Source: Hyphochytrium catenoides | Taxonomy: Eukaryota > Protista > Hyphochytriomycota | Direction: 5' to 3' | Length of the DNA: 64,000 nt | NCBI GenBank assembly: GCA_900088475.1 | Contig: FLMG01004277.1 | Coordinates: 49,141-113,140 of the forward strand | Shown: piece after piece, positions 3,401-59,573 of the stretch | Layout of the letters: each line of letters opens with the position of its first letter | How positions within the stretch are numbered: the first letter of the stretch is position 1 | The notes under the pieces: model-generated | What the model saw: the letters and a program-made list of their open reading frames with translations, nothing else | What the model was told of the DNA's origin: nothing | Database searches by the model: none | Translations under genes and position numbers: made by a program

Positions 3401-6400
3401 ATCTTGGATGGTTTGGCATCAAGTCCTAACTCACTCCTTATGTCTCATATCAACCCTAGACGACTGGCAGACGGTCCTGGCGTGTTGTCCTACCTACAAG
3501 TCCCATCGTTGAAGGCTCCCGGGTCAATTTCGGGAGGCGTCGCACTAGAGAAACCTTTAGAAAGGATTTCTGGTGAAATGTACATCAATGTATTTCTGGC
3601 TTCATCAGTTCCAGCCGGAACCTTCTTCTGTGTGGACTTCTGTGTGGACGAAACTTGTAGGAGGGAGCTTCTGACAGGTCAGTACTGAGCTCAAAGGAAC
3701 GCTATTTAGAACGATGAAAGAAGATAATTGGGACGTTGCTTGGAGGAGGTGATGATACCGCCGTGACTAGTGGATACAAATGTGAACATGTTTACAGGGA
3801 TCGATGTAGTAGCGGCATATTGTCTTGCTTTTGCTTCCGACGTGAGCACTGCGCTACGTAGCTGTTCTGAGGCGTATACTTCTAACCAATGCCGCGTTAA
3901 AACTTGTAGACCAACTCGCTTTCTCTTGGCGAAAGTCCAGTGAAACAAAGGGGTATGTGTCTGTTAGAGGGCAGACAACACCGAGCCTCCAGGCACCTAC
4001 TGCGCGGCCTAATGAAACTTTTGGGTGCTGGACCGTTCCGGTTAATATTCCGGCCGCTCCATTTTCTATGGTGACGTTTACGCTCACTAATGTGACCAAC
4101 CCGAAGAGCTTAGGGCAGGATCCTCTCCGCACGAGTATCTTGAGGTCTATAGCCTTCAGTATACAGGGCAACTCAATGGCGGTATGCATCTGCGTAGTCA
4201 CAGTCTTTCTCTTTGCGTCGCTCTTTTTCTTCGTCTATACAGCCTTTGTAATCAACACTGATAATATTTCTTATTGCAGCTGGAAGGTGCTTATCTGGCC
4301 GGGCCAGCTTTCCTGACGGTGCAGCCTATCTTTGCTGCAGGACCGAATACCGACAATGTTTATAACGTTGTATCGGTTATCCTTTACTGCCTAGCACTCG
4401 CCCTATGTATATTCATCGCAAGGGTCAATGGTATGTCTCGTCTTGGAACCTCCTTCTGTCGGACCTTTTCGCCAGTACTTTTCCCATTGTAAAAGTACTT
4501 TTTTGGCCTTTGAGGTGTGTGTATAGAGAGTTCTTTCAAATGTTAACCCTGGGCTTCGTTCACAGGCATATCATTCTCAACGAAGACGCTATGGACCGAT
4601 CTGACATCCACATGCGTACTTATCCACTTTTGCATCCTGGTATGATGAACCCTGAATGGAATAACAGCAGACACGCGTGTACATTGTCTCTCGCCTTCTC
4701 TGACTTCTCGCCCCCTCTAATTTCTCGCCCTGCTTCCATGAGGAGATGGAGCCCTACAGCGGTTCTCTACTCTTTCTGTGTTTCACATTTTTTTGAAGCC
4801 GTGGTTTTCTATGCTAAGAGGAGTGTGTCCGGATGGCTCTCATTCTTGGTTGTCTTGTCCTCCATTGGGCTCCTTTCAGGTGGCGAACAACGCTACCTGG
4901 ATCCAGGTAGCTGGGTCGTACTACTATTACCTACAGGTTTTGGACTACTGCATCCAGTGGACTATGCTACTCTCAGTCTGCTACCATTGGGCTAGCATTC
5001 TTACCCTTAGGCTGAGAAAAGTACCCACTCCTGTCCAGGTAACAATGGTTGTTCTCTTGCTTCTTGACTAGCTTAGGGATTCGAGGCTATCAAATCCCCG
5101 TCCTTCTATTTTTCTGGCGCTTGAAGGCTGACTCATCATCTTAGGCGGCAATCTTTGTGGTGCTCAACCTTGCTTTTTATGGCATTGCTATCTGGGCATT
5201 AGTCTCGACAAAGAACATTATCAACTGCGTGTACAATGAAGCCAAGCCTCTGTACTCCGATCTTCAGCCATCTTATTGGAGAGATCTGTCTAATAGCTTG
5301 GTAAGTAATTTGCTAAGCCTTTATGCCTTCTCTAGACCATAATAGGTGCCGACCTGGCGAACCCTTGCATTAGTGACATTTGATTTTACCTGGTCTAGTT
5401 ACGTGCTTAGCTTGCACTTATGAGATCACACAGGGTTGATAAGACGGTCGAGTCTTCAATCCTGTCATCCACAGCGTCGACGGTGCTGACTCTTTCTTTT
5501 CTCAGTCCTGTCAGCAATATCAGTCAAAAGGAAACTTCGCTCTGTACTACCATTTTAGCCTAACAGTGATCTTTGCGGTGAATACGCTAATCCTGAGCGC
5601 TTTGGGCATAATGGTGATGCTAAGGGGAAGAAGACTCTTGAAAAAGGTATGGACTCCAGAGACTAGGGAGTACACTGAGTTTATTGGGAGTCTGACGGTG
5701 CTGCTTGTTCAACGTCTTCGTCCTACAGGATCGTCAAAAGGAAGGAATGAACACAAATGAGAGGAAGCACGACGTTATCAAACAAGCCATTACTCGCTGG
5801 GTTCTTGTTATCTTCGTTGTTACCTCTATTTACCTCGTCTCTTGGGTGCTGGACATCTATAACTTTGCAAAAAATAACAACGCCTTGATGGAGTACACAG
5901 TATGGTATGTCTTCGTCATCTGGCTGCCAAACGTGATACCGGCATGTGCTTTCGTGTTCCTCCAGGTAAGCGGCTCCATATACTCCCATGTACCTCCTCG
6001 GTCTCACCGTCCAGGTTCCTCCCTATTACGGTATGACCTCACCCTGCCGCCAATCTAATGTATTTACCTCTTCTCCATAGTCGGACAGCGGTGTACGCGA
6101 CCTCTCGCAGCCCATAAAACGGCCGGAGCGTTACTCAGTACCTCAGAATGGCAACCCTTACCTATCGGACGACATGGACTTGGATAAGGAGACACTGACC
6201 GATCTAGCCAGTGGCAATGATGCGAGCAGCAGGAGTATCAAGGCGCAGACTTCTTTCAAGTCGGGCAATTCCGGTAATACATTTTCATAATCATACCTTG
6301 CCCAGTCATTCGTATAGTAATGACTAACCTTACGTGCCAGAGATACTATCTGTTCTCCAGATGCACATTACTATATCAGCTAGCATCTCTCTCTTTCTCG

Positions 6401-9400
6401 CCATGTTCATCGAGCCCGGCGTGGCGAGGGTTTCTGATTCTGTTATTTAGCTGTAGGGCTGTTCTTGTCCGTAAACGCCCTTCACTTATCTTTTCACTAA
6501 CATGCACCTCTATGTCGTAGTACTAAGCCTGGCAGTGCATCTGCGAATGTGCCCAAAGAAAGAGATGCTGACGCCTGGAGCGAAGTATAGGATCACTGCT
6601 TACGCGACTGACGTTTCTGCAATGACGGTAAGACCATGCGGGGTGAGATGTGACGGAAATGGGAAAGCCGACTGTGGAGCAAGAGGAAAAGGTTTCTTTG
6701 GAAGAACTATGAAGTTCGGGAAAGAAAGTCGAGTGTGTTGTTTCTTACTGCATTGGGTCACATCGTGTGTGTTCACTGCCGTACAGATGAACGCGGCCCC
6801 TGTAGGAAACCCTCTAGAAGGGCTTCTGAGCCGCCAGGACAAGGATAAAGGGGGGCTGACCCGTTCTTGGCATAAGATCTCGTCCACAGAAGCCTCGTAT
6901 GCCACACCTGTTGATTTTTCTGACTCTTCCCAGCATACTGAAGTGGCTGATGAGGTAAAAAGCCAAATTGAGCCCTTCTGTCTAGAGCACATCGTCATCC
7001 TTTCCTAACATCTGGATATATTTGCTCTTAAACTCATGGATATGCCCTGCTCTCTCATGGATGCGCTTTCGCCACCCAGACGGAGATTTCTTTCATTGTC
7101 ACACTTAGAATCCCAACCAGCATCCGCAACCCCGAGCAGAGCATCCGCTTTGTTGTCTATGAGGTAGGAAAAAATTGACCCTGGTGCCTAGCGTTTGCTG
7201 CTCTTAGCGGTTTGCAAAGTTTCGATAAAATGCATTCCTTAGGACTTTTCTTCACTGTGCCTTTGACAGGAATGCCTAGAGGCTCAGCTTAATGAAAAAT
7301 CCTTTTCAACCTCGTCGTCCCGTTCCACGTTGGTGCGAGAGGGACCCAGCAGGAGATCCATCACGGACCGTCCTTCTCTGTCTATTACCAGGCCTAGAAG
7401 CTCTTCAGCACCCTCTACCTCGGAGCTCTACGGCGGCACGAAAAAATGCCTGTTTGAGTTTCAAGCCACCTGCAAAGAGCTGCTAGATGGCATTGACTTT
7501 TCTGGTACCTGCCAGTCAATATTTCCTATCTTGCCTTATCCACCTCTTTTGAGTACAGGGCTCCATCTGAATGGTACATGTTATGTCTCGCTGTTTATCT
7601 TACTTGTTTTTTCCTGCCAGGCTCTCTGCAGCTCGTAAATATCTCTAACCGCAAAGAGACGTCTGTCCGCTCTACATGGACTCAGTATATGAGTGGCAGA
7701 GGACTCCTTTTTCAGAGAGCGCCTTCTCTCAGCTCAGCGGAGTTGACTCTATCTCTTGTTCACTCAGAGGACCCTGACATAGGAGGTACGTATCCAAGAG
7801 AAAGAATCGCTTTCCTAGGCTGGCTGCTTTTAGGGTGGTGGCTCAAAATATCCTTCATCAGCCTGCTACCTGTCATATCGGCCCCAGCCTTTCCATTCGC
7901 AACGCTTATCTTTCGCTGACTTTTGCCTCTGTTGCCATATTTAGTTGACAAGCAGGAGCCGACGATAGTCAGAAGCTTTGTCCTACCTTCTCATTCCCCT
8001 GCGCCAGAGGTGATAGAAATGTTCGAGACCTCCCTTTATACCAATGAAGTGCCCAGACAAATGATTGTTCTCCTAATGAAAAAGAGAGGCGAAGCTGTGG
8101 AAAGGTTCGCAATGCTCTTGTGCCTCTAACCTCTATATCTCCTTCAATTTGGCCACAAGGCATAAGGATCATTGTTAGCTCGCCAGCAGGCTAATCTATA
8201 TACTCCGTTCCTGCTTGATGGGTCCGCTGTCCCGACTTTCGAGCTCGATAGTTTCACGTCTCTCACTCTTTGTGACTGTGGATGGCCGTAGCCGATAACC
8301 CTTTTCGCAATAGTTTGTTGATGATAAGAAGCTAACTGCTTTACATAGTGCGGCAAGAGATTTGAAGCTCTTTTATGAAACTGAGTCCACAGCAGAAGGA
8401 GAGGGAGCAGGTCGCTCTTCAGACTCATTCAAGGTCTCAAGGAGAGTTAGTCAGCCGTTGATCACTCGGGAGTGGCTGGAACAGGTATGTACCGCTAAAC
8501 GAATGATGACATAGGAATGAGGAATTACACGTGACACTTATGCGGAGATAGAGAAACCACCAGACGCCTAGTCTGATAGTTCAACGAGAGGTGTTGATTC
8601 TGGGATTAAAAACAAGTAGTAGACACACGCTGACATGTACACTTTAGCGTGTGAACCGCCGCCGCGAGTACCTGGCTTCTCTCAAGGAGAGCATGAAGGC
8701 TTGTTCAGAAAGAGAACGATTGGGGCGTTTGCTTAAACCTCTACAGGACAGGAAGGTGCCAGAGCTACGGTTTATCCCTACAAATTTACACGTCCATGTA
8801 AGCATCTCTGGTGGATCTCTACTATCTTGTCATATTCCTAACAACAGATCGTCCGTGAATGCTTTATCCTTCGTGTTCCTCTCTGCAGCGCCTTCTAGTA
8901 CACCGAAAAGGTGCTGCCGTTGCTGCTCCTTTGGCTCTACGAACTCTCTTAGAGCCCCACCAGCGTGCTATTTATGACTACGGGACCATTACAGTTGGGG
9001 CTTTTGCCGCTGCCTCGATGAAGTTTAAGAAAGGAGGTAATTTTTATGCCTTACTACTTCTTATTAGGTTGGAGCTGACGTGTCTCCTGACAGGAGTACT
9101 ATCATACCGAGATCGCATTAGGCGCTTGCGGCAGAAGATGGTGAGAAGAGAATCCGTCACAGAGAGAACAACCGAGGGAAGGGCTTCTGATATACGCGCA
9201 TCTCTTCTCGGCGACAATTCTGAGGTTTGTGACACAGCTTTTTATTACGCGCAGAAGTCACTATAGCTGGCGTTTGGCTTGAGATTTCTGCGAAACTCTC
9301 CTTCCTTCTGATTGTGAGTTTTTTCCCCCTAATTACCGGCATCTAACAATCTTACCGTTACCTAGTCAAGGTCGTCAACTGTGGAACGGAAAGTCTGGAC

Positions 9401-11177
9401 AGACGACGCGATGCGGATGGATGACTTAGAATGGGATATGGCGGTAGGTTTGCTGTTCCGTTTTCCTCTAAAACCTATCAGAGCGGCTCGGTTAATACTG
9501 TCTGCACCTATTTCTCTTCATCACTTCTAGTGGCTCTCTATGTAACTCTTCCTTTCCCTGCTTCTTTCCAAGGAAACTTCCCGTGTCCGGTGTAGCTTGC
9601 CTACATTGATTCATTCTGATGCCTGACCTTTTCAATCTCGACAGTGCCGATTGGATGTTTGCTTAACCCAGGCGATGACGGCCTTGGTAACGGCATTTAC
9701 TCACAGCATCCGGGTGGCCTTGACCAGTACCGATATCAATAAGGGGAAACAGTACCTTGAGATCATCATGAAGCTAGGATATCTGTTTCAGGTGCCTCTG
9801 TGCCCAGACGTGTACCGCCGCTCACTTTGTCATGGGTGATAGCTTTCTCTAGTTGGTCCTGTAATGTGGATGATGCGCATAGAGCAACCGATCCCTTGTA
9901 ACGTCTTGCCGTCTCGCCACTTTTCCGATTTTTCCTCTTTTGCTTGCTACTAGTAGATGTCGGCCTTAAAGTCTATCCATCTTGCGCCAACTTAGTAACC
10001 ACCCCTTTCTGCTTTATTCTAGGTCGAATCACTACTTTCCACGGATGGCAAGGAGCTTGGCATGCTGCAGGACGTCGCTGCTGCCGTTGCGAAACTACAG
10101 AGCGTAAAGTTCATGTTAGAGGACATCGGAGACATTGTTCCAAGAGACAGGAGAGGTCCAGGGGTCGTTGGAGTGAGCCTGCAGCCAGGGAATGACGACA
10201 GGGAGGATTCGTACCTAGTAAGAGTGCAGATAAGGTGCCACTCAGATGCTCTGCCGGAAGACTTGAGGTGAGAAGAAGCGTCATTAGCTGGTCATCCTAA
10301 GTCCCCCCTGCTCTTGGCAGCACTCGCCTCTGCCGAATCTTGCTTCAAGAGTCCTTCCTTCTCTGGCCTGAACGCAAGACAATTGACTCGCCCTTCTTTC
10401 TTCTCATCCGCTGGATTGTAGGAATGGTCGTTTGGTTTCAGTCGTCGCTCTGCTGTTCACACAGAACCTCTATCCAAAGCCCAATCCCGTCAAATCTTCA
10501 GCTCCAACTAAAAGGACACGCCTGGAGGAGCTCATCAACGTGAACAACGCAAATGTGTTGGCAGAGTACTGTTCAGGGTATCAGAAGATACTTCCGACGG
10601 CTGCCTCTCTTTTACCTAGAGTGCAGAGATTGAAGGCTGCCATTGACGAGGCTGCCGCTGTGGCAGATGCGCAAGTGCCTGTTCTACCACTTGCCGCTGA
10701 TATCTGTCGAGAGATGAACGCCGGCAGGGTAACGATGTGCAAATCTGCAAAGGACAAAACGTACTTGAGTAGTACATTTGAAGAAGTAAGCCTTTTGCTG
10801 TCTTTCCTTCTGCTTCGTCCACTAGTTCTTCATCACTTAGTTTATCAAGACTTGTCCGCCTACCTGTTGGAATCAAATCCTGATTTATTTTACATATGGT
10901 GTTTGCTATGGGCTACGGAAGTAACGCTGTTGCCATGTCTCGCTTATTCTTATGATAGGCACGGATTCTTCGGGAACACCACAGCTTGGAGGAGAAAGAC
11001 TTTGCTAATGTCCTGTTGGTGTTACGGTATCATGGCGTCTGTCTTCAGCAGCTGGTACGCCAGTCGGGCCGTACTCCTATCACGTTTATGGAGAACGAGG
11101 ACGATGCCCCTCGGTGGCCATCATTTGACGAAGCAGAGGATGGCAAGCGAGCCCTGGGGCCTTATGAATATCTATGA
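476..11177 (+). CDS. Multi-exon receptor-enzyme fusion: signal peptide, 5 Cys-rich modules, beta-rich ectodomain, 7TM (GPCR-like) domain, C2-like region, inositol polyphosphate 4-phosphatase (INPP4)-like domain; probable pseudophosphatase
   Basis: ATG 476 gives the signal peptide MYAAVWLAVLGLPCLLQSVYG (an in-frame ATG at 455 is an alternative). Cys-rich exons run to 2676 and beta-rich exons lie at 2861-4190. Seven hydrophobic helices are encoded at ~4360-5965 (VVSVILYCLALALCIFIA; LTSTCVLIHFCILVA; VLDYCIQWTMLLSVCYHWASIL; AAIFVVLNLAFYGIAIWALV; LTVIFAVNTLILSALGIMVML; WVLVIFVVTSIYLVSWVL; VWYVFVIWLPNVIPACAFVFLQ). INPP4 motifs follow in the expected order: FIPTNLHVH, TITVGAFAA..KFKKGG, DVCLTQAMTALVTAF, GYLFQ/VESLLSTDGKELGMLQD, RVTMCKSAKDKT. 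Stop TGA at 11175-11177. A few junctions (e.g. ~3680-3950) were not resolved. Confidence 0.8.
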
Positions 11178-11425
11178 CCGTGCTTTAGGCAGCAGAAGTG
11201 ATTCTTACGTCCCCGTCTCTACGGCTATAATCAATGAATATTTATTCGCGGGCCGAAGTTCCCTCTTCTACTTCTACGTGGCCTCCGAGTTTCACTTGAT
11301 GTCGTGAAGGGTGAGTTAGCAGCAGGAGTCAGTGCCCTGGCCCTGTTCTCAACACTCATACGCAGTTCCTCAGGTGGAGGACCAAGGGAGGTCTGAAAGC
11401 ATGTCTCAGTTTAAGCTTTATTAGG

Positions 11426-14400
11426 TTACATCTTGGCCTTACAGCTGCTGCAATACCAGTCATCTTCAGGGACTTTTTTCAAACCCACACAGTTCTAGAG
11501 TGGGACCGGCAAAAATAGAGAGAGGAAACCCAGAGCAGTGAAGAGGCAAACGTTAGAAGGGATGTAGCTCCGCGACAAGAGAGTAGACGACTACGCAGTC
11601 AAGCAGAAGATGTAGAGGCTGATTGACTATCTAGTCGATGGTGGCCAAGGAAGGGAGTAAGACCATGCTATACGGAGAACGGAACGATAGAAGCTTAGAG
11701 TAGCATTAGGTGCCATATAACGTGAAGAGAGCGCCAACAAAAGCTGGAGAGAGTTCTCTTTCGTACCAAATGGAAGACGCGGTCGCAGCCTTTGCTACCA
11801 TCCTCAGAGCCACAAATGACATGCGAATCCAATCGAAGCTTCCCTTTCTTGCAGGCGCCACATGTCTGGGACTCACATTCCGTGCAGAACCATTCCGCTT
11901 GCGGCGTTTTCTAGCATAAATTTGGAGCAACTGTGAGCTAGACGCCGCAAAACATGCAAGCAAAACGGTAGATAGCGTTCCACCAGACACCCAGATGGGC
12001 TGAGTTCTAATAGACAGTATGTCCTTGGAAGGACACATCCGCGAAAGGCAGAGGATGAAGCCGTGACCATCCGAAACATTTACCTTGAGTCCAAGGCACT
12101 GCAAATGGAACGAATGCGGACAGCCATCACAGCAGAGAAGCTTGCCCTCCTTCTTGCATATGAAACACTCTGTATCCCAGCCATCCGGGGACTCTTCCGC
12201 TTTCTCCTCCTCCTTCTTCTTTGATTTGTCCTTCTTCCCCGACGAGGAGTCCTTTCGGGGATTTGGGGGAGGAGTCTTTGTTGTGACTGAGCCACGAGAA
12301 GATCTTCGTCCTCCTTCTGTGTCTCTAGGCTGCTTGCCCTTGCAGCTTGGGCAGAAGGTCTTCCCCCGAGGAGTCCGAGTAAGACCCACGCAGGCGAGAT
12401 GAAAGACCTTTGTGCACCCATCGCTGAACATTTTTCACGGTACCCACGGCAGAGCGGAGTCAGTGCACTTTCGACAACAAGGACCATGAGGGGCACTCAT
12501 GAGACTGCGTAAGTCCGAAGAGGTGGCAAGAGAAAAGTAGGTGACGTCACAGATGAAGGCTCAGGCCGACCAAGGAGATTGCCAGGGGTAGGGGAGCTGA
12601 ATCTACTTTAGAGGCCAGAACTAGTGTGCGAAATCATACCAGCATATGAGGTCACCGCCTTCTTTGCAGACGCAGCAGTTCTCTTCCCAGGTGTCTTCAT
12701 CTTCTCCGGACTCTTCATCCTGTACTACTTCTTCTTCCTCCTCTTCCTCTTCTATAACCAACTCCTTTGCCTTCGCCTTCGCAGACCTAGAGGGACGTTC
12801 TGGAGCTAGCCAAACAGATAGTTGATAAGTGGTTGGCCAAGAAATAAAATATAACATGATCCACAATCACAGAAGTACATAAGGCTAGGGGACAGGCGAT
12901 TCTCGCTGATGCGACTGTCCCGCTTAGCTACTTACTTTTTTCCTGAACTGCAGGAGGAGAGCTATGTTTGTCCATTGCCAGCACTAGGCGAAGTAATGTG
13001 CGGGCGGCACTTCCGATGGCGGCAAGGGTCATTGCCTCTTTTACGGACTAGTGGGCGGTGGGGTTAGACGAAGGATGTAGGTTCAATAGAATGTGCGGCC
13101 ACGAGATAGATGAAAAGAGTAGTAGAGATCTCACTGACTGCGACATCGCGTCACCACTCGCCTAGGTCCCAAGTCTTACATTAATCCAAAGATTGCGCTT
13201 GCTCTTTGTGGTCCAGATGGATATGGGTTGGAGGTTTTCGTCCTCATCGTCTTCCTCTTCTTCTTCTTCCTCTTCATCTTCGTCAGTCTTCCCTTCTCCT
13301 CTGTTCCCTTCTTTCTTCACCGAGTTGGTCACCTGCCGTCGCGAAGATGTAAATGAACTTGTGTGAGAAAGATGGACTCTTGAGGACTAATCACCTCCGC
13401 CTTCCTACCTTATCGTCGCTTTTTTCCGAGCCCTGCGGGCTCTCATCAGACGACTCCCCTTGGCCTGGATGAAAGGCTCCAGTAATGGCAGCCTCGATGT
13501 CTAGTAAGACCTGCCTTAGGTGCTCCTCATTCCCATCGCTCGAAAGGAGAGCCAACTGTGAAGACACAAATACGGCCAAAGTCAGGGAAGTCAGTTCCGC
13601 TTTACTTCATAGTCCTTTATAAAAACAAGGGTATGAAAGCCACTTGGCAACGTATTTTAACAGAGCCATCAGACACAAAGGAAAGTCTCATTCTTTCGAA
13701 GCAGCCTCCCGCTCTGCCATGGCGATGAGGAGTAGTACTTTCTACGCACCGCTGTGGCCCGACGAGGATGATCTTTATAATCACTGCCATACTTGGTCAT
13801 AATGTTAAGGACATCGCCCTCTGTCTTCTCTAGCGCCGCCTTCACCTCCTTCACATCAAACTCAATCTTCGTGTCGCGCTTGACGACTCGACCTTTGAAC
13901 TTGTTTGTGTATGATAGAAAAGTGTCCTATAACACGATTAAATTTTCAGAGGAAAACTAGGCGCTCGTGTAAAGGTAAGAAAAGCAAAAGGGAAAGCTCA
14001 CCGGATCTGTAGAGTCAACATGAGGAGACAGAATTAGCTGATCATCCTCCGGTTTTGACTGCGCTTCGTTCACTTCCGTCTTCTGTCTTTTGGGCATCTA
14101 GTATGCCCAAGGTAGGGATTCATCTCAGACAGAGTTGATGTTTCGATATTGTATCCTTTTACCTTTTGCAAGTTTGGCAGGGTATCTTCCAAAGCTCTCT
14201 TTAGATGGCGCTCCCGTATTCCCCTCTCGTCTAAAGCACGAATAAGCTCTTCTACGTCCTCCTAGAGCATACGACATCAGTCAGAGTCCGCCGAGAAAGC
14301 AAGGAGTCATTTTGTTATAGGCCCCTCAACTTCGATCAGAGATACATCCCATGCTGTACTTCTCTTCTCCATGCCTGTCACTCCTTACTTTATGGCAGAA

Positions 14401-22119: not shown

Positions 22120-22550
22120 GAAGAGAGAAATGGAAAGGGAAGAGGAAGCCAAGTGCCGAGGAAAGAAGAGGTTTCTGATGCGGGGGCAGCGTTTATGGAT
22201 CACTTTGTTCGGCTGCGCTGCCACACTCTACAAGACGCTTTCCCCTTAGGTGAGATCCCTTCGAGCAATCAATCTAGTTAGATAAAACACTGTATTTGGG
22301 GGTGTCTCCCTCAAGTAGGTGTTTGGGGGGTGGCTTCTTGTAACGCCGAAACGACATATGGAGATGCTCGTCGTTAGATTCCTCTGCTCTCTCTCTCTCC
22401 CTACTGTTTGTCACTGCTCTATCATGCCCACTTCTGTCTCTCTCTCTCTCTCNNNNNNNNNNNNNNNNNNNNNNNNNNNNNNNNNNNNNNNNNNNNNNNN
22501 NNNNCTCTCTCACTCTCTCTCTCTCTTCTGCTTCCTGTCTCCCTCTCTCC
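21920..22550. repeat. (GA)n then (CT)n microsatellite tracts in the divergent intergenic region between ARL6IP4 and the IP3R, including an assembly gap (N 22453-22504)
   Basis: Directly visible: GA-rich 21920-22140 and CT-rich 22380-22550 flanking the N run. Confidence 0.9.
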
Positions 22551-40646: not shown

Positions 40647-43600
40647 TTAAAGCTGCACAAAGTTGTCACCATAGTCCTCAAGGTATAACCCACACAGCAT
40701 CTCATCCCAAAAGGTAGGCAGAGCTTTCACTGCAAGGTCACAATCAGGGGCCCACTGAACTTCTAGGACAGTAGGAGAATATCTCTCTCTCCCACTACCT
40801 TTCCGTAAGAGGATGTCAACCCCAAACATTCCCCTTGCTGGACAAATATTCGGTTCTTGGAGAGACCAGCCTACCATTGAAGCTCTTTAGAACACATTCT
40901 AACGTGAGATGAAGGAAAGCAGGAAAGAGAGATGAAGAGTGTAAGGGCAAGACTTTCCGGGCCTCTTACCACCATTGAGATGTAGCTTCTTTCCTGAAGG
41001 ATGTGGAGGTTGAAGTTCTATCGTTAGAGGGACAGCTAAGAAGACGCTCTTTATCACTTTATCAATCAAAGGCTGCACATCGCTTTCCCTGTGGACACGG
41101 CAGAACGTGTAAGAGGGGTTTAGGCATCAGGGAGCAGAGAGAGAGCGACAGCAACGGGAGCCTAGCTAACGATAAGAGCACATGAAACGCGTAGGAAAAT
41201 TTCGGCAAGAGGTCATAGACGTCTCTCGCAACCTCGTTACGCGATTTAGAGTCAGAAGGAAGGGAGAGCATCACACGTTTCTCATTGAGCGCAAAAAGAT
41301 GGAATCGGAGCCTGAGAAAGAGGAGACAATCGGAGCCTGAGAAAGAGGAGACAATCAGGGGGTCGAAGTCCTCAGAATAATAGGGCCTCGCACCAGGATG
41401 TCCCTGGATTATCTCCTTCAAAGACTCGGATAAACTCATCCATCAACGGATCTTCCCTTGTCCCTTCTCCCCGAATCTCCTTTAGCCCTTGCTCGTCCAG
41501 ATAATTCATCACGGTAAAGTGAGTCTGATAACACTCCAGGTCACTGCGAATGAGCAAAGCGAACGCTTAAGCATAAGGAAAGAATAGCTCTTGGGCCCGC
41601 ATCTATGTGTGTGTCTCCGCCTCCTAATTCTGAGGTTTATCCGCATCAATCTACCTGGTAGTGTAAGCTTGGTTGGCGGCCCTGATGTTAAACAATCGAT
41701 GGCGATAAACTTTTACTGGCTGAAGGGAGTGCACCTGTCCAAAGGAGTGAGTGAGGTTTAGCCGGGGGTACAAGGAACTTCACCTCATAATCGGGTTAGA
41801 CAAAGGAGATAGAAGTTCCTCTGTTAACCGAGATAAAGACGGAAACCCTCTACTCCTCCTTCTTTCTCTTTTTCCCGAGCTTACCGCTATGTAATAACGT
41901 AAGTCAAACTTTCTCCCTTCGTAAAGTGCAGGCTGGGTGATATACCGACAAGCTAGGCGGGGACACGTTTCCAAGTGACGAAGGATGCAGGAGAGCGATG
42001 ACGTAACTGGGTAATCTATTGACTGCTGCCCTCTAAAGCGCTTGAGAATCCAGATATTTTCCTCGCCGGGTTTAGTCTCTGACCTCCGACCTTCGCTCTC
42101 TCCCTCGGAAGGGAAACCGAAGTAATCTATGAGGAATGCAACCAGCTGGGAGTGTTGGCTAAGGTTATAAGAAGGTGGAAGCCAGTCGCCTAAGTGTAGG
42201 AACATCTGAGCGATCTCCCTCTGCTCCTCCTCTGACAGGCCGAGTTGAGGAGGGAAGAGCGACGACGACAAAGGTCCCTGCCTTTGGACTTCTCTCTTTG
42301 CCGTCTGTAAGGTCGCGGCAAGATGCTCCTTAGATACAAGCATCCCATCCCAAGAGAACTGGTTCAAAATTTTGCCATTCTTATCTTCTTCCTGATCCTG
42401 GCCAAACGTGTGATTGATGAGAAAGAGGATGTCAGCCTCCGCTGCGCTCTCTACCCAGTGGAAGCGGGGCGACGAGAGAACTAAGCTATTAATATGCCGA
42501 TGATCATCGCAATACAGCTTGAGTGTAATACTGCCTGCATTAGAGAATATGGGAAATACGGCGTGGAAGGGCGTCAACGAAACGAAGTGGGTATATATAT
42601 ATGTATATATATACACTGATGCGTAGAAGCGCATGAGGAAGTAAAGGATGACAGAGAGAAAGACGACCGTACGGTAGCGTGGAGAAGGACCATTCGTCTG
42701 GATATCATGGAGGCAGGAAGATTGTTGAGAAGACGAGGCTGAAACTATAGGAAAGTGCATGAAGACTGATCCCAATGCACGGCCCGAGGGCTCAACCTTG
42801 CTTAGCCGATTCCAGGCGCCGGAGAGCTTCGGACCATCCCTCTAAAGTGTCCGCATTCCCCGAAGGATGTCCTGTCAGAGGCTGTCCTACATAGTCATCC
42901 GCGTGCTGAGGCAGAGGATGTGATCAGGCTTAACAGATAACCGAAGTGCACGCTACGAAGTGAGAGGCCGAGAAAGGAGATGAAATGCTTGCGTGGCTCC
43001 TACTTGCGAGCGCTTCTCGGTTTACCTGGATTCTAAGGGATATTTCTTGAAGGTGGTGATACGCATGCGTCCTGTTGACATCATCTTTGGACATGAAGCC
43101 TAACATTCTCAGCTCTCTCCTTGGGCCAACCTCCACCGAAGGAAGATAGTCTCGTGTCACCTCTTCTCCCTCAGCAATGTCCTTCACCGGCCAGAGGAGA
43201 GAAAGAGTGAAGGGACGGACATTCTCGCCCTCTTCCGGGAAGATGAGAAGAGGATAGCAGACGCAGTTTGGCTCCCAGGAATGTGACACAGCTGTGCCTA
43301 CTTCGTCCATGAGGTACCACTTAGGATAGTCCTCTCCGGGCACTAGATAGCAGTTAAGATGCGGCCACATTCTTTCCCACACCCTGTCCACCAAAGTCTG
43401 AGGATCTTCTTCTCCTTCGCTCTCCTTTCCTTCCTTTCTAGCCTCAGATCCTAGCATGCAGTCTTTGCCATACCACGATAGGAGGCCGAGAAAAAGTTAG
43501 AGCCGTGGTTGATTAGCGAACAGGTCAAGAGAACAAGAAGAAGAGAGAGAGAGAGAGAGAGCTGGTTGTCAGAGATAGAGTCAGGAAGAGAGTGGGAACC

Positions 43601-44830
43601 AGGCCATAACTCGCCGATGTAAGAACCAATAAGGAGAAGCTGCCTCCGGTAGAGGCGCAGCAGATCCTTTCAAAGAAAGAGAGAGGAGCAAGCGCTGCCA
43701 TCAGGCATAACCACCAAGAGCTGCGAGAAGTTCAAAGGCAGCTGAAGGACATGCTGCAGCAACGTGAGAGCAGGTAGAAGCAATGGAAACGCGCTCCATC
43801 GCCCTTCATAGAGAGGAGAGAGAGAGGGAGGAAGAAAGAGAGAGAAGTGAAGAGAGAGAGGACACAAAGGAAGCTTTCGTGGAGTGAGGATCTACCTATT
43901 CGCTCTGCTAATCCTTCGATCTCTCTCAGATGACGCCGGGATTGGGGAAAGGTGGTTGTCCTGGTCAGAAAACAAGTGAGACGACAATTGACTAATATAT
44001 GGAGACATTAGACCCAGAAAAGAGAAAGAGCTGGAAGAAGGGAGAGAAAGAAAGAAAAGCTGGCAGGCGAGGAGACAGAGAAGGGCGGGCGGGTAGGTGG
44101 AGAGAGAGAGGGAAAGAGAGAGAGATTGAGAGTGTTCGAGGGAGGAGATAGGTGTGCAGCGAGAGAATGCAACGATATAGTTATAGAAAGGTGTAATAGC
44201 AGAAGTTATGAGGAAACAAGCTAAGAAGGATAGCAAAGGAAAGAGAAGAGAGAGTGCAAAAGAAGAAAGAGAGAGACAGAGAGAGACAGCAGCGGGGGTG
44301 TTATAGCAGGAGAGAGAGAGTAGTATGACTGACCACATGTGATCAATGAGGAAGGCGTCACCGTGTGCCTTTATGTCTTCTTTGGCGAGGAGAGAGTACT
44401 TTCGAGAGGGAGGGACGAATCTTTCTTCGTCAGACAACTCTACTTCCTGCTCCTCCTGCTTTTCCTCTTCCTTCTCGTCACTCTCCATGTCTTTCTCGTC
44501 CTTGTCACTCTCTTCCTCCTCTTCCTCGTCGCTCTCTAGCTCCTTAAAGACAAAGGAAGCCCCTGCGTCAAAGATTTGGCTCAAGATCTTCATACAGACC
44601 AGTCCATGCAGAGCCTGAGGCAGTCCGATGGCTTGGAACTGAGCAAAATGACGGGCATAGAAGGCATTAAGGCGCTCTTGTTGCTGTCTTCTCCTTCTCT
44701 CTCTCTCTTCCTCCTCTTGCTGTGCTGAGGGAGGAGGAGGTGGAGGAGGAGGAAGGGGAGGTTCTGTGCTCTCTGCTTCGCCTCTTAACGAGCCTGCTGA
44801 GGGAGGATGGTACTTGTCATCCGGCGGCAT
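40647..44830 (-). CDS. TTLL12: Tubulin-tyrosine ligase-like protein 12 (SET-like + TTL domain), multi-exon
   Basis: Motifs KILSQIFDAG.SF, FLIDHMW|TT, WYLMDEVGTAVSHSWEPN, SLLWPVKDIAEGEEVTRDY, LVSKEHLA, WLPPSYNL, WILK, YITQPALYEGRKFDLRY, HFTVMNY, MFGVDIL and LEVQWAPDC. First ATG at 44830; stop TAA at 40647. Confidence 0.9.
41303..41356. repeat. Perfect 25-bp tandem duplication in a TTLL12 intron
   Basis: aatcggagcctgagaaagaggagac occurs twice (41303-41327, 41328-41352), followed by aatc. Confidence 0.9.
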
Positions 44831-44879
44831 TTTCTGAGAGGAAGACGCGCACCAGGAAAGTCCCTGCAATGCAGCTGTG

Positions 44880-54043: not shown

Positions 54044-54120
54044 GCTCTCTCTCTCTCTCTCTCTCTCTCTNNNNNNNNNNNNNNNNNNNNNNCTCTCTCT
54101 CTCTCTTCTCTCTCTCTCCT
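54044..54120. repeat. (CT)n microsatellite spanning an assembly gap (N 54071-54092)
   Basis: Directly visible. Confidence 0.9.
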
Positions 54121-58709: not shown

Positions 58710-59573
58710 ATGGCCGACGAAGAGGTAGATTTCCAACGTGTAGTTGAGGAGCGCGACGTGGAGATTGGAGGACTCAAAGAAGCAGACTCTTCCAGCGGAA
58801 AGAAGCATGGCCTCGTATTTGGTTATCGGTTGACGGAAAAGCTAAACGGGGACTTTTACAGAGCTGTGGCTGGCGAGTTCTTCGGGACCCTGATGTTCTT
58901 GTGGTATACCATTACGGCAGTGGTCTTCTTCAGAGTGCCCACGTTTGATGTGGAGTCCTTGCCAGCAAATTCGAACCCTTCCTTCTCGGAGGGAGACTCT
59001 GCCACCCAACTTATGATCGCCTTCTCCTTTGGTATTTCTATTGCAGTGCTCGTCTACTGGTTCGCTGGCGTCTCTGGTGGACATATCAACCCTGCCGTAT
59101 CTCTTGGACTCTTTATCTGCAAGAGAGTTTCATTTCTTCGTGCGGCAGCCTACACTGCCGCCCAAATGGTTGGTGCTATCGTCGGTACTGCAATCGCTAA
59201 AGGCGTAAACCCCAGCCTCTTTGATGCTGCCAATGGAGGGGCCAACGTAGTATCTCCTATCCTGACTGATGGGGAGGCGTTTCTCGGTGAGCTCATGGGC
59301 ACTGCAGGCCTTGTTTTTACGGTCTGCATGGCTTGCGACAAGCGAAGTGCCGGCAATTTCGTTTCAGCATTAACCATTGGTTTATCAGTCTTCATTGCCC
59401 ACATCGCTCTCATCCCTATCACTGGCACCTCTGTCAACCCTGCTAGGTCTTTCGGACCAGCAGTAGTTGCTGATGCCTGGGAAGACCAGTGGATCTTCTG
59501 GATTGCCCCTTACACTGGTGCTATTGTTGCTGCCCTTGTCTATCAACTCCTTTTCCGGTCTAAGGACGATTAG
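58710..59573 (+). CDS. Aquaporin (MIP family), PIP/AQP1-like, intronless
   Basis: FYRAVAGEFFGTLMF, SGGHINPAVS, GTSVNPARSFGPAV and WEDQWIFWIAP; two NPA boxes and six TM helices; ar/R filter read as F-H-T-R. Confidence 0.96.
   Translation: MADEEVDFQRVVEERDVEIGGLKEADSSSGKKHGLVFGYRLTEKLNGDFYRAVAGEFFGTLMFLWYTITAVVFFRVPTFDVESLPANSNPSFSEGDSATQLMIAFSFGISIAVLVYWFAGVSGGHINPAVSLGLFICKRVSFLRAAAYTAAQMVGAIVGTAIAKGVNPSLFDAANGGANVVSPILTDGEAFLGELMGTAGLVFTVCMACDKRSAGNFVSALTIGLSVFIAHIALIPITGTSVNPARSFGPAVVADAWEDQWIFWIAPYTGAIVAALVYQLLFRSKDD

What the first reader, a model, noticed from the sequence alone, without database searches (positions are those of the whole stretch)
10420..11177. INPP4 active site degenerate: CX5R is CX5K (CKSAKDKT), likely a pseudophosphatase or lipid sensor
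Seen: TGC AAA TCT GCA AAG GAC AAA ACG (10738-10761) has Lys (AAA, 10756-10758) where INPP4/SopB-type enzymes have the invariant Arg of CKSAKDRT. Other remembered INPP4 motifs are altered too: GINEQQ appears as QNLYPK, and the C-terminal KN.G..YAFN..YRPP is missing. The scaffold motifs and reading frame are intact. Inference: several independent losses argue against one sequencing error and suggest a catalytically dead or re-specified domain that binds phosphoinositides or scaffolds partners.
Basis: partly seen in the sequence, partly recalled or inferred. Interest (0 to 1): 0.75.

Follow-up and report, generated by a model that had tools for sequence, protein, structure and literature searches.

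The report
Receptor-fused INPP4 domain with degenerate active site
The last exons of an intron-rich receptor gene from a soil protist encode an INPP4-type lipid-phosphatase domain that keeps its scaffold but has lost the catalytic arginine and two other family-invariant active-site motifs, so it is most likely a non-catalytic pseudophosphatase paralogue.

Summary
Codons 10738-10761 read CKSAKDKT, with Lys (AAA, 10756-10758) where 169 of 169 relatives with this loop have Arg in CKS[AG]KDRT.

The stretch is the last two exons (10422-10785 and 10959-11177) of a multi-exon + strand gene. That gene is colinear with oomycete "GPCR-INPP" proteins: a 7TM receptor followed by an INPP4 domain.

The Lys is not an isolated change:
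- Of 54 columns that are at least 90% conserved in 144 family domains, the window substitutes 19 and cannot be aligned at 8 more. The family median is 0.
- The losses fall in three blocks: GINE becomes NLYP, the P loop and its helix are changed, and the C-terminal R..N..KN.G..AFN block is degenerate.
- Scaffold exons diverge no more than is usual for the family.

The gene looks alive. Spliced RNA contigs support both terminal introns. Six of seven exonic differences from a second sample are synonymous, while the introns vary freely.

Animal P-Rex, whose INPP4-like domain has no detectable activity, shows similar decay. One Albugo paralogue has lost the catalytic Cys.

Best reading: a pseudophosphatase paralogue kept for a non-catalytic role. 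Activity was not tested, and the codon could not be read directly from the reads table. This scan had already noted the same stretch in an overlapping window (s1-354464).

The parts
4880..5965 (+). Exons of the seven-helix receptor part of the same gene (approximate span, with introns inside)
   Evidence: tblastn of oomycete GPCR-INPP proteins gives colinear hits at 4880-5029 and 5548-5965 that match their transmembrane regions, upstream of the phosphatase hits.
7950..9443 (+). N-terminal exons of the INPP4-like domain. My reading of the splice sites: 7950-8097, 8314-8484, 8648-8797, 8889-9036, 9094-9140, 9366-9443.
   Evidence: GT..AG sites and open frames read. tblastn hits at 7950-8105 and 8648-8812. 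Family motifs P-T-N-L-H and T-V-G-A-x-A-A are present. There is no RNA support, so the boundaries are provisional.
9645..9791 (+). Scaffold exon (R-x-D...Q-A...L-G-Y-L-F-Q)
   Evidence: 34.5 bits against the HMM of 144 family domains. Identity to the family is 0.36, equal to the family's own median.
10023..10267 (+). Scaffold exon that starts with V-E-S-L-L-S-T-D-G-K-E-L-G-M-L
   Evidence: 52 bits against the family HMM. The 3' end is fixed by a spliced RNA contig from run X5 that joins 10267 to 10422. A second X5 contig lies at 10035-10185 with no differences.
10268..10421 (+). Intron, 154 bases, GT..AG
   Evidence: Skipped in a soil-metatranscriptome contig (X5) that differs from the window at one letter.
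10422..10785 (+). Catalytic-core exon. It holds the GINE-equivalent loop and the P loop.
   Evidence: 88 bits against the family HMM. phmmer gave 62 relatives, the best an Albugo candida protein at 41% identity.
10465..10476 (+). N-L-Y-P where the family has the near-invariant G-I-N-E
   Evidence: HMM columns 213-216 are all substituted. G-I-N-E or G-V-N-E was found in 156 of the 169 relatives that carry the P loop. Five of the other 13 were inspected: three have G-I-N-Q and two have G-I-N-E in a variant context. Eight are fragments that were not inspected.
10738..10761 (+). P loop C-K-S-A-K-D-K-T. Cys, both Lys and Asp are kept; the Arg is replaced by Lys (AAA, 10756-10758).
   Evidence: All 169 relatives with the loop have Arg at this position.
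10762..10785 (+). Start of the helix after the P loop: Y-L-S-S-T-F-E-E against the family's A-M-S-V-T-L-E-Q
   Evidence: Substitutions M320L, V322S and L324F at columns that are at least 90% conserved.
10786..10958 (+). Last intron, 173 bases, GT..AG
   Evidence: A contig from run X6 (a relative about 95% alike) joins 10783 to 10959 with two letters in between, which fits an exon end at 10785. Homology resumes in another frame at 10959.
10959..11177 (+). Last exon, with the stop codon at 11175-11177. Its "TI-loop" block is degenerate and it carries an acidic insert.
   Evidence: Only 16 bits, and only its first 39 residues align to the family HMM. No homologue detects it by tblastn at E<=0.01. 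Identity to the family is 0.31, against 0.64 among members.
11022..11075 (+). L-R-Y-H-G-V-C-L-Q-Q-L-V-R-Q-S-G-R-T in place of the family's M-R-x-x-G-x-R-x-x-N-x-x-K-N-x-G-x-x
   Evidence: Substitutions M348L, R354C, N357Q, K360R and N361Q.

Best explanation
The stretch is the C-terminal catalytic core of a real, expressed paralogue of the GPCR-INPP class, which joins a 7TM receptor to an INPP4-type CX5R phosphoinositide phosphatase in one protein. In this copy all three elements that line a PTEN/INPP4-type active site have decayed:
- The P-loop Arg is Lys.
- The G-I-N-E loop is gone. By its place in the fold I take it for the WPD-equivalent loop.
- The conserved block about 40-50 residues after the Cys, the TI-loop region, is scrambled.

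The rest of the fold is kept. So the domain most likely no longer turns over phosphoinositides at a useful rate. It is probably retained as a non-catalytic module on the receptor's cytoplasmic tail.

The loop C-K-S-A-K-D-K stays basic, so the most plausible role is binding without hydrolysis: of a phosphoinositide head group, or of a partner protein. That could modulate the catalytically intact GPCR-INPP paralogues that earlier notes report in the same genome.

Shown here: homology, the substitutions, their concentration in the catalytic exons, splicing, and coding conservation. Inferred: loss of activity, the mapping of the motifs to the WPD and TI loops, and the non-catalytic role.
For: - The codons read CKSAKDKT.
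- Arg is present in 169 of 169 relatives that have the loop (60 of 60 in the first set).
- An alignment of 16 diverse family domains has 30 invariant columns, which include G-I-N-E, C-K-S-x-K-D-R-T-x-M, R..N, K-N and F-N..Q.
- At 54 columns that are at least 90% conserved in 144 domains, the window keeps 27, substitutes 19 and has no aligned residue at 8. The family median is 0. The highest counts among complete members are 10-11. Two members with 18-19 are truncated gene models.
- Identity to the family is normal in the scaffold exons (0.36 and 0.39, against the family's own 0.36 and 0.35). It drops in the catalytic exons (0.32 and 0.31, against 0.50 and 0.64).
- The window has the longest terminal branch of 145 sequences in a tree of the core exon.
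- A family profile hits the P-Rex2 and P-Rex1 IP4P domains at E 5e-46 and 3e-38. These also lack G-I-N-E, lack the Lys before the P-loop strand, and have Leu for the Met after the loop.
- P-Rex1 has no detectable phosphatase activity, and its vestigial site serves G-beta-gamma binding (PMC6795519).
- The gene looks alive. Spliced RNA contigs cross both terminal introns. Of seven exonic differences from sample X2, six are synonymous and one is Ile to Val, while at least 16 substitutions lie in introns between 7950 and 10022 (codons worked out).
- From my own knowledge, not checked here: Arg-to-Lys in the CX5R loop of Yersinia PTP lowers kcat by three to four orders of magnitude (Zhang et al. 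1994, Biochemistry).
Against: - There are no activity data.
- Lys keeps the positive charge, and the nucleophile Cys, the P-loop Asp and both P-loop Lys are retained. Residual or altered catalysis therefore cannot be excluded.
- No orthologue was found (best relative 41% identical), so neither the age nor the conservation of the Lys could be tested. The long branch may partly reflect sparse sampling.
- The AAA codon was not read directly in independent reads, because the table was cut off.
- The one A>G change in the related transcript contig (X6) was not located.
- RNA contigs from the same organism do not cover the codon.
- Only two of the synonymous differences lie inside the phosphatase domain.
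Confidence: 0.7

Rival explanations
1. The domain is still an active phosphatase, or phosphotransferase, with changed substrate preference or kinetics. Lys partly stands in for Arg, and the remodelled loops re-shape the pocket.
For: Cys, Asp and both Lys of the P loop, and the Arg and Thr of the strand before it, are all retained. The coding sequence is under purifying selection. The P-Rex1 authors also leave open activity on unknown substrates.
Against: Arg is invariant in 169 of 169 relatives. Three separate active-site elements are altered at once, with 19 conserved columns substituted. From my own knowledge, Arg-to-Lys in CX5R enzymes costs about 10^3-10^4 in kcat.
Confidence: 0.13
2. The gene, or its phosphatase tail, is decaying after duplication and has no function. 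The changes are neutral drift.
For: It has the longest branch in the family. The last exon is barely recognisable. Earlier notes say intact paralogues exist in the genome, so redundancy is plausible.
Against: No frameshift or stop occurs in any of the exons read. The splice sites are canonical and used in RNA contigs. Six of seven exonic differences between samples are synonymous, while the introns carry many substitutions and indels. Scaffold motifs are conserved at the family's normal level.
Confidence: 0.08
3. The Lys codon is a sequencing or assembly error, or a rare allele, or an RNA-level A-to-G change restores Arg.
For: AAA and AGA differ by one transition. The X2 contig over the site has one unlisted difference, and the X6 transcript contig has one unplaced A>G.
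Against: The chance that a single difference in 348 bases falls in this codon is about 1%. The only typed differences for X4 are C>A and T>C. Even with Arg restored, the GINE and TI-block losses would remain.
Confidence: 0.03

Closest known systems
Oomycete GPCR-INPP "bigrams" (van den Hoogen et al. 2018, PMC5784254; for example Albugo candida CCI46295.1 and Pythium oligandrum TMW66408.1)
   Same: These are the best sequence relatives, at 41% identity over the core exon. The order of a 7TM region followed by an INPP4 domain is colinear. The scaffold motifs are shared.
   Different: All but one of the oomycete members examined keep the Cys, the Arg, G-I-N-E and the C-terminal block, with at most a single conserved-column change elsewhere. 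The window has lost the last three. The window's gene is intron-rich, whereas several relatives lie on contigs that fit an intronless gene. The class was reported only from oomycetes and Nannochloropsis, and the source organism here is unidentified.
IP4P domain of animal P-Rex1 and P-Rex2 (PDB 6PCV, 7SYF, 8TUA, 9ZQ7)
   Same: It is an INPP4-homologous domain, with family-profile E values of 3e-38 to 5e-46, and it has a decayed active site. It also lacks G-I-N-E, lacks the conserved Lys before the P-loop strand, and has Leu for the Met after the loop. No phosphatase activity is detectable, and it serves as a scaffold in GPCR signalling by binding G-beta-gamma.
   Different: P-Rex keeps Cys and Arg but lost both P-loop Lys, the Asp and the Thr, and it keeps the R..N..K-N.G block. 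The window shows the reverse pattern. P-Rex is a soluble Rac-GEF, not a receptor fusion. The decay is clearly independent.
INPP4A and INPP4B (animal type I and II inositol polyphosphate 4-phosphatases)
   Same: They are homologous across the whole C-terminal domain and share the scaffold motifs. They appear among the hits.
   Different: They are active enzymes with C-K-S-A-K-D-R-T, G-I-N-E or G-I-N-Q, and the full C-terminal block. They have C2 and PH domains at the N-terminus and no 7TM region.
Albugo laibachii paralogue P0160 (UniProt F0WIP8, 1517 aa)
   Same: It is a second member of the oomycete family with a broken P loop (S-K-N-A-T-D-R-A, catalytic Cys replaced by Ser) and G-I-S-E. Inactive paralogues therefore seem to arise repeatedly in this class.
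   Different: It loses the Cys, not the Arg. Only 7 conserved columns are changed, and its C-terminal block is intact.
Myotubularin-related pseudophosphatases (MTMR5, MTMR9, MTMR13 and others), recalled from the literature and not tested here
   Same: They are CX5R lipid-phosphatase paralogues with substituted catalytic residues. They persist as regulators and partners of the active paralogues.
   Different: They belong to an unrelated subfamily of the fold and are soluble. There is no evidence here for heteromer formation.

Membership tests
INPP4-type phosphatase domain (homology) | Significant sequence similarity along the domain to INPP4 and GPCR-INPP proteins | tested here: met
   phmmer with the core exon gave 62 hits, the best at E 1.8e-12. 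Four exons score 88, 52, 34.5 and 16 bits against an HMM of 144 family domains. tblastn hits are colinear.
INPP4-type phosphatase (active enzyme) | P loop C-K-S-[AG]-K-D-R-T with the invariant Arg | tested here: not met
   The window has C-K-S-A-K-D-K-T. Arg is present in 169 of 169 relatives.
INPP4-type phosphatase (active enzyme) | G-I-N-E motif about 95 residues before the Cys | tested here: not met
   N-L-Y-P at 10465-10476. The motif is invariant in alignment A1.
INPP4-type phosphatase (active enzyme) | C-terminal block R-x-x-N-x-x-K-N-x-G...A-F-N-x-x-Q...P-x-x-Y-[RK]-x-P | tested here: not met
   Substitutions R354C, N357Q, K360R and N361Q. The rest does not align apart from a possible F and L-G-P-Y-E-Y.
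INPP4-type phosphatase (active enzyme) | Hydrolysis of the 4-phosphate of PI(3,4)P2, Ins(1,3,4)P3 or Ins(3,4)P2 | not testable with these tools
   This needs a biochemical assay.
GPCR-INPP bigram | A seven-helix receptor region and an INPP domain in one polypeptide | tested here: inconclusive
   Same strand and colinear tblastn hits to the TM regions and the INPP4 domains of oomycete GPCR-INPPs. RNA junctions were seen only for the last two introns, so continuity of the whole transcript is inferred.
Pseudophosphatase | Phosphatase fold retained with catalytic residues substituted | tested here: met
   Scaffold conservation is normal while the catalytic columns are lost. The fold itself was not modelled, because the joined protein was not submitted.
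Pseudophosphatase | No catalytic activity | not testable with these tools
   This needs an assay.
Pseudophosphatase | Expressed and under purifying selection, so not a dead gene | tested here: inconclusive
   Spliced RNA contigs exist, and the ratio of synonymous to non-synonymous exonic differences is 6 to 1. The counts are small, and only two of the differences lie in the phosphatase domain.

The most novel reading that the evidence does not exclude
A receptor-tethered INPP4 domain has been converted, independently of animal P-Rex, into a non-catalytic module. It keeps a basic Cys-Lys-Lys-Asp-Lys pocket. It works as a PI(3,4)P2 sensor or trap, or as a dock for G-beta-gamma or another partner, and so tunes the catalytically intact GPCR-INPP paralogues of the same organism. 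This would be a second, convergent link between GPCR signalling and a dead INPP4 fold.
Probability: 0.2. Interest if true: 0.65.

Novelty: new variant of a known kind. Interest (0 to 1): 0.4.

Why it matters
GPCR-INPP proteins are catalogued, but the 2018 papers read here report no experimental test of them. The usual assumption is that ligand binding switches a lipid phosphatase on or off.

A paralogue that keeps the receptor and the fold but has lost three active-site elements shows that the family also makes non-enzymatic members. Myotubularins and P-Rex do the same. Any functional study or gene count of the class should therefore separate active from inactive copies.

It also offers a natural contrast pair within one genome, an intact copy and a degenerate one. 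That pair could be used to ask what the INPP4 tail does beyond catalysis.

The interest is moderate. Pseudoenzymes are common, and nothing here points to a new mechanism.

Tried and rejected
**Searches that found nothing**
- Pfam on the exons gave no hit. Full-length oomycete relatives also gave none, so Pfam has no model of this catalytic domain and the blank means nothing.
- phmmer of the core exon against PDB sequences found nothing. Only a family profile reached P-Rex and the SopB P loop.
- phmmer of exon 10023-10265 against PDB gave weak hits to designed ankyrin repeats. I rejected these as chance similarity in an A/L/D/G-rich stretch.
- The word-index search with the 121-aa exon found nothing, as expected from its length window.
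- The search for related loci in metagenome contigs gave 599 pattern matches, none confirmed.
- The look-up of encoding contigs with the ATG-started ORF over the site found nothing on record.
- Literature searches for the GINE motif and for Arg-to-Lys kinetics returned nothing usable.

**Weak or incomplete results**
- The ESM Atlas look-up gave only weak leads: oomycete hypothetical proteins, INPP4A and IpgD, all at 0.86 or below.

**Checked and excluded**
- I looked for a canonical last exon further downstream. None exists between 11177 and the neighbouring minus-strand PHD gene.

**Not done**
- All exon pieces were handled separately.

Full report
**What is at the coordinates**

The window is eukaryotic DNA: 49% G+C, no tRNA genes, and many short exons with GT..AG introns.
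- Codons 10738-10761 on the + strand read C-K-S-A-K-D-K-T. AAA at 10756-10758 encodes the final Lys of the CX5 loop.
It is the last two exons of a gene: 10422-10785 and 10959-11177, with the stop at 11175-11177.
- The intron before it (10268-10421) is skipped in a soil-metatranscriptome contig from run X5 that differs from the window at one letter.
- The intron inside it (10786-10958) is skipped in a contig from run X6, a relative about 95% alike.
- Frame 1 happens to stay open through that intron.

**What the gene is**

Pfam has no model for this catalytic domain. Neither the exons nor full-length relatives score.
- An exhaustive phmmer search with the 121-residue core exon found 62 relatives.
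- The best is only 41% identical. The top named ones are long oomycete proteins from Albugo candida, Pythium oligandrum and Pythium insidiosum, annotated as inositol-3,4-bisphosphate 4-phosphatases.
- A second search seeded with the Albugo domain returned 3076 family members, of which the best 120 were listed. They include one named "GPCR-INPP 3", animal INPP4A-like proteins and a Physarum transcript.
- tblastn of twelve relatives against the window gives colinear hits. The first fall on their transmembrane regions (4880-5029, 5548-5965). The rest fall on the phosphatase exons at 7950, 8648, 9645, 10023 and 10422.

The finding therefore sits in the tail of a GPCR-INPP type gene. That architecture was described in oomycetes and Nannochloropsis, and the 2018 papers report no experimental test of it (PMC5784254, PMC6033456). 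The source organism is not identified. Runs that hold near-identical DNA are labelled with one organism, and small shares occur in rhizosphere and soil samples.

**Is the Lys unusual?**

Yes.
- Of 174 family proteins fetched, 169 have C-K-S-[AG]-K-D-R-T.
- The other five are two unrelated or partial hits, one protein truncated before the loop, one with C-K-S-A-N-D-R-T, and one Albugo laibachii paralogue with S-K-N-A-T-D-R-A.
- No relative has anything but Arg at that position.

**Is it an isolated change?**

No.
- An alignment of 16 diverse domains has 30 invariant columns. They fall into the V-E-S-L-L-S-T scaffold, F-x-x-G-I-N-E, Q-x-x-x-N, a Lys before the P-loop strand, the P loop with its following Met, Thr and Glu, and a C-terminal R..G.R..N...F-N..Q...P..Y..P block.
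- I built an HMM from 144 family domains and aligned each window exon to it separately.
- At the 54 columns where at least 90% of members share one residue, the window keeps 27 and substitutes 19. Eight more, in the tail, have no aligned residue.
- The 19 substitutions are P207A, G213N, I214L, N215Y, E216P, Q218P, A221V, Q232E, K288A, I292V, R317K, M320L, V322S, L324F, M348L, R354C, N357Q, K360R and N361Q.
- Family members have a median of 0 mismatches. The worst complete ones have 10-11. Two with 18-19 are gene models truncated at the C terminus.

**Where the divergence lies**

| Exon | Role | Window vs family (median identity) | Family members vs each other |
|---|---|---|---|
| 9645-9791 | scaffold | 0.36 | 0.36 |
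| 10023-10267 | scaffold | 0.39 | 0.35 |
| 10422-10785 | catalytic | 0.32 | 0.50 |
| 10959-11177 | catalytic | 0.31 | 0.64 |

The part that is most constrained in the family is the part that has drifted here.
- No homologue detects the last exon by tblastn at all.
- In a tree of the core-exon columns the window has the longest terminal branch of 145 sequences: 2.14 against a 95th percentile of 0.94. This partly reflects the lack of sampled close relatives.

**Relation to the active site**

A profile of the family hits the IP4P domains of P-Rex2 and P-Rex1 at E 5e-46 and 3e-38. It hits SopB only over the P loop.
- The P-Rex1 cryo-EM paper describes this domain as a PTEN/SidF-like fold whose site is formed by the WPD, P and TI loops, with a Cys-Arg-Asp triad.
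- It reports no detectable phosphatase activity, and re-use of the vestigial site region for G-beta-gamma binding (PMC6795519).
- In the family, G-I-N-E follows a strand that precedes the helices leading into the P-loop strand. The R..N..K-N.G block lies 43-50 residues after the Cys. From this order I infer that they are the WPD-like and TI loops. I did not verify this in three dimensions.
- P-Rex has also lost G-I-N-E (V-L-E-N in P-Rex1, A-L-E-S in P-Rex2), lost Lys288, and has Leu for the Met after the loop. It keeps Cys, Arg and the TI block, and lost the two P-loop Lys and the Asp.
- The window shows the complementary pattern: Cys, both Lys and Asp are kept, while Arg, G-I-N-E and the TI block are lost.
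- By knowledge recalled and not checked here, Arg-to-Lys in a CX5R loop alone costs three to four orders of magnitude in kcat.

**Is the gene alive?**

- No exon I read carries a stop or frameshift, and the splice sites are canonical.
- Contigs of a second sample of the same organism (X2) differ from the window at seven exonic places that the table lists.
- Six of these are third-position synonymous changes (6236, 6855, 6924, 7380, 8710, 9026). One is Ile to Val (7122).
- At least 16 substitutions and several indels lie in introns between 7950 and 10022 (codons read).
- With about 72% of random changes expected to be non-synonymous, one or fewer in seven has a probability of about 0.003.
- Over 9496-10663 the X2 contig has at most one difference in 634 exonic bases. 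It has at least three substitutions and two indels in 534 intronic bases.

This argues for purifying selection on the coding sequence. The numbers within the catalytic exons are too small to speak for them alone.

**The codon itself**

The reads table was cut off at 9864, so I could not see the site.
- The X2 contig over 10709-11056 has one unlisted difference.
- The X4 contig covers 10699-10849. The only typed differences for X4 are C>A and T>C.
- The X6 contig has one unplaced A>G.

An error or an allele at this one base is therefore unlikely but not excluded. It would not change the conclusion, because the other two motifs are lost as well.

**Conclusion**

This is a divergent paralogue of a known class with a degenerate active site, most likely a pseudophosphatase kept for a non-catalytic role.
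- Earlier notes of this scan report two other receptor-INPP4 genes with intact sites in the same genome (s1-367363, s1-354400). I could not check them.
- If they hold, this is a paralogue-specific loss with active partners available.
- The Albugo laibachii copy with Ser for the catalytic Cys suggests that such losses recur in the class.
- The specific role, whether lipid sensor, partner dock or regulator of active paralogues, is inference.

**Left out**

So there is no structural model of this copy.

Noticed in passing
P0160 (Albugo laibachii, UniProt F0WIP8, 1517 aa), residues about 1430-1445: This oomycete GPCR-INPP paralogue has S-K-N-A-T-D-R-A in place of C-K-S-A-K-D-R-T, so the catalytic Cys is Ser, and G-I-S-E for G-I-N-E. 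The rest of its domain is canonical. It is a second, independent candidate pseudophosphatase in this class.
   Followed up: partly
window 11706-12866, minus strand: The neighbouring gene runs convergent to the receptor gene and encodes PHD-type zinc fingers (Pfam PHD and NSD-like PHD, E 4e-12 and 3.5e-10) with a Glu-rich linker.
   Followed up: no
window 58710-59573, plus strand: A single-exon 287-aa ORF is a full-length MIP/aquaporin (Pfam PF00230, E 7e-60). An intronless gene is unusual in this otherwise intron-rich window.
   Followed up: no
window 41780-44869, minus strand: These exons belong to a tubulin-tyrosine-ligase family gene (Pfam TTL, E 2.6e-12), with long Glu-rich and Ser/Leu-rich low-complexity stretches nearby.
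   Followed up: no
window 22453-22504 and 54071-54092: Two runs of N mark assembly gaps.
   Followed up: no
window 10387-11304, frame 1: This frame stays open for 306 codons, straight through the last intron and past the true stop. An ORF-based reading therefore gives a false 291-aa protein whose tail is not the real C terminus.
   Followed up: yes
window 7802-7815: Seven substitutions between the window and sample X2 cluster within 14 bases of an intron. This may be a small replaced or hypervariable patch.
   Followed up: no
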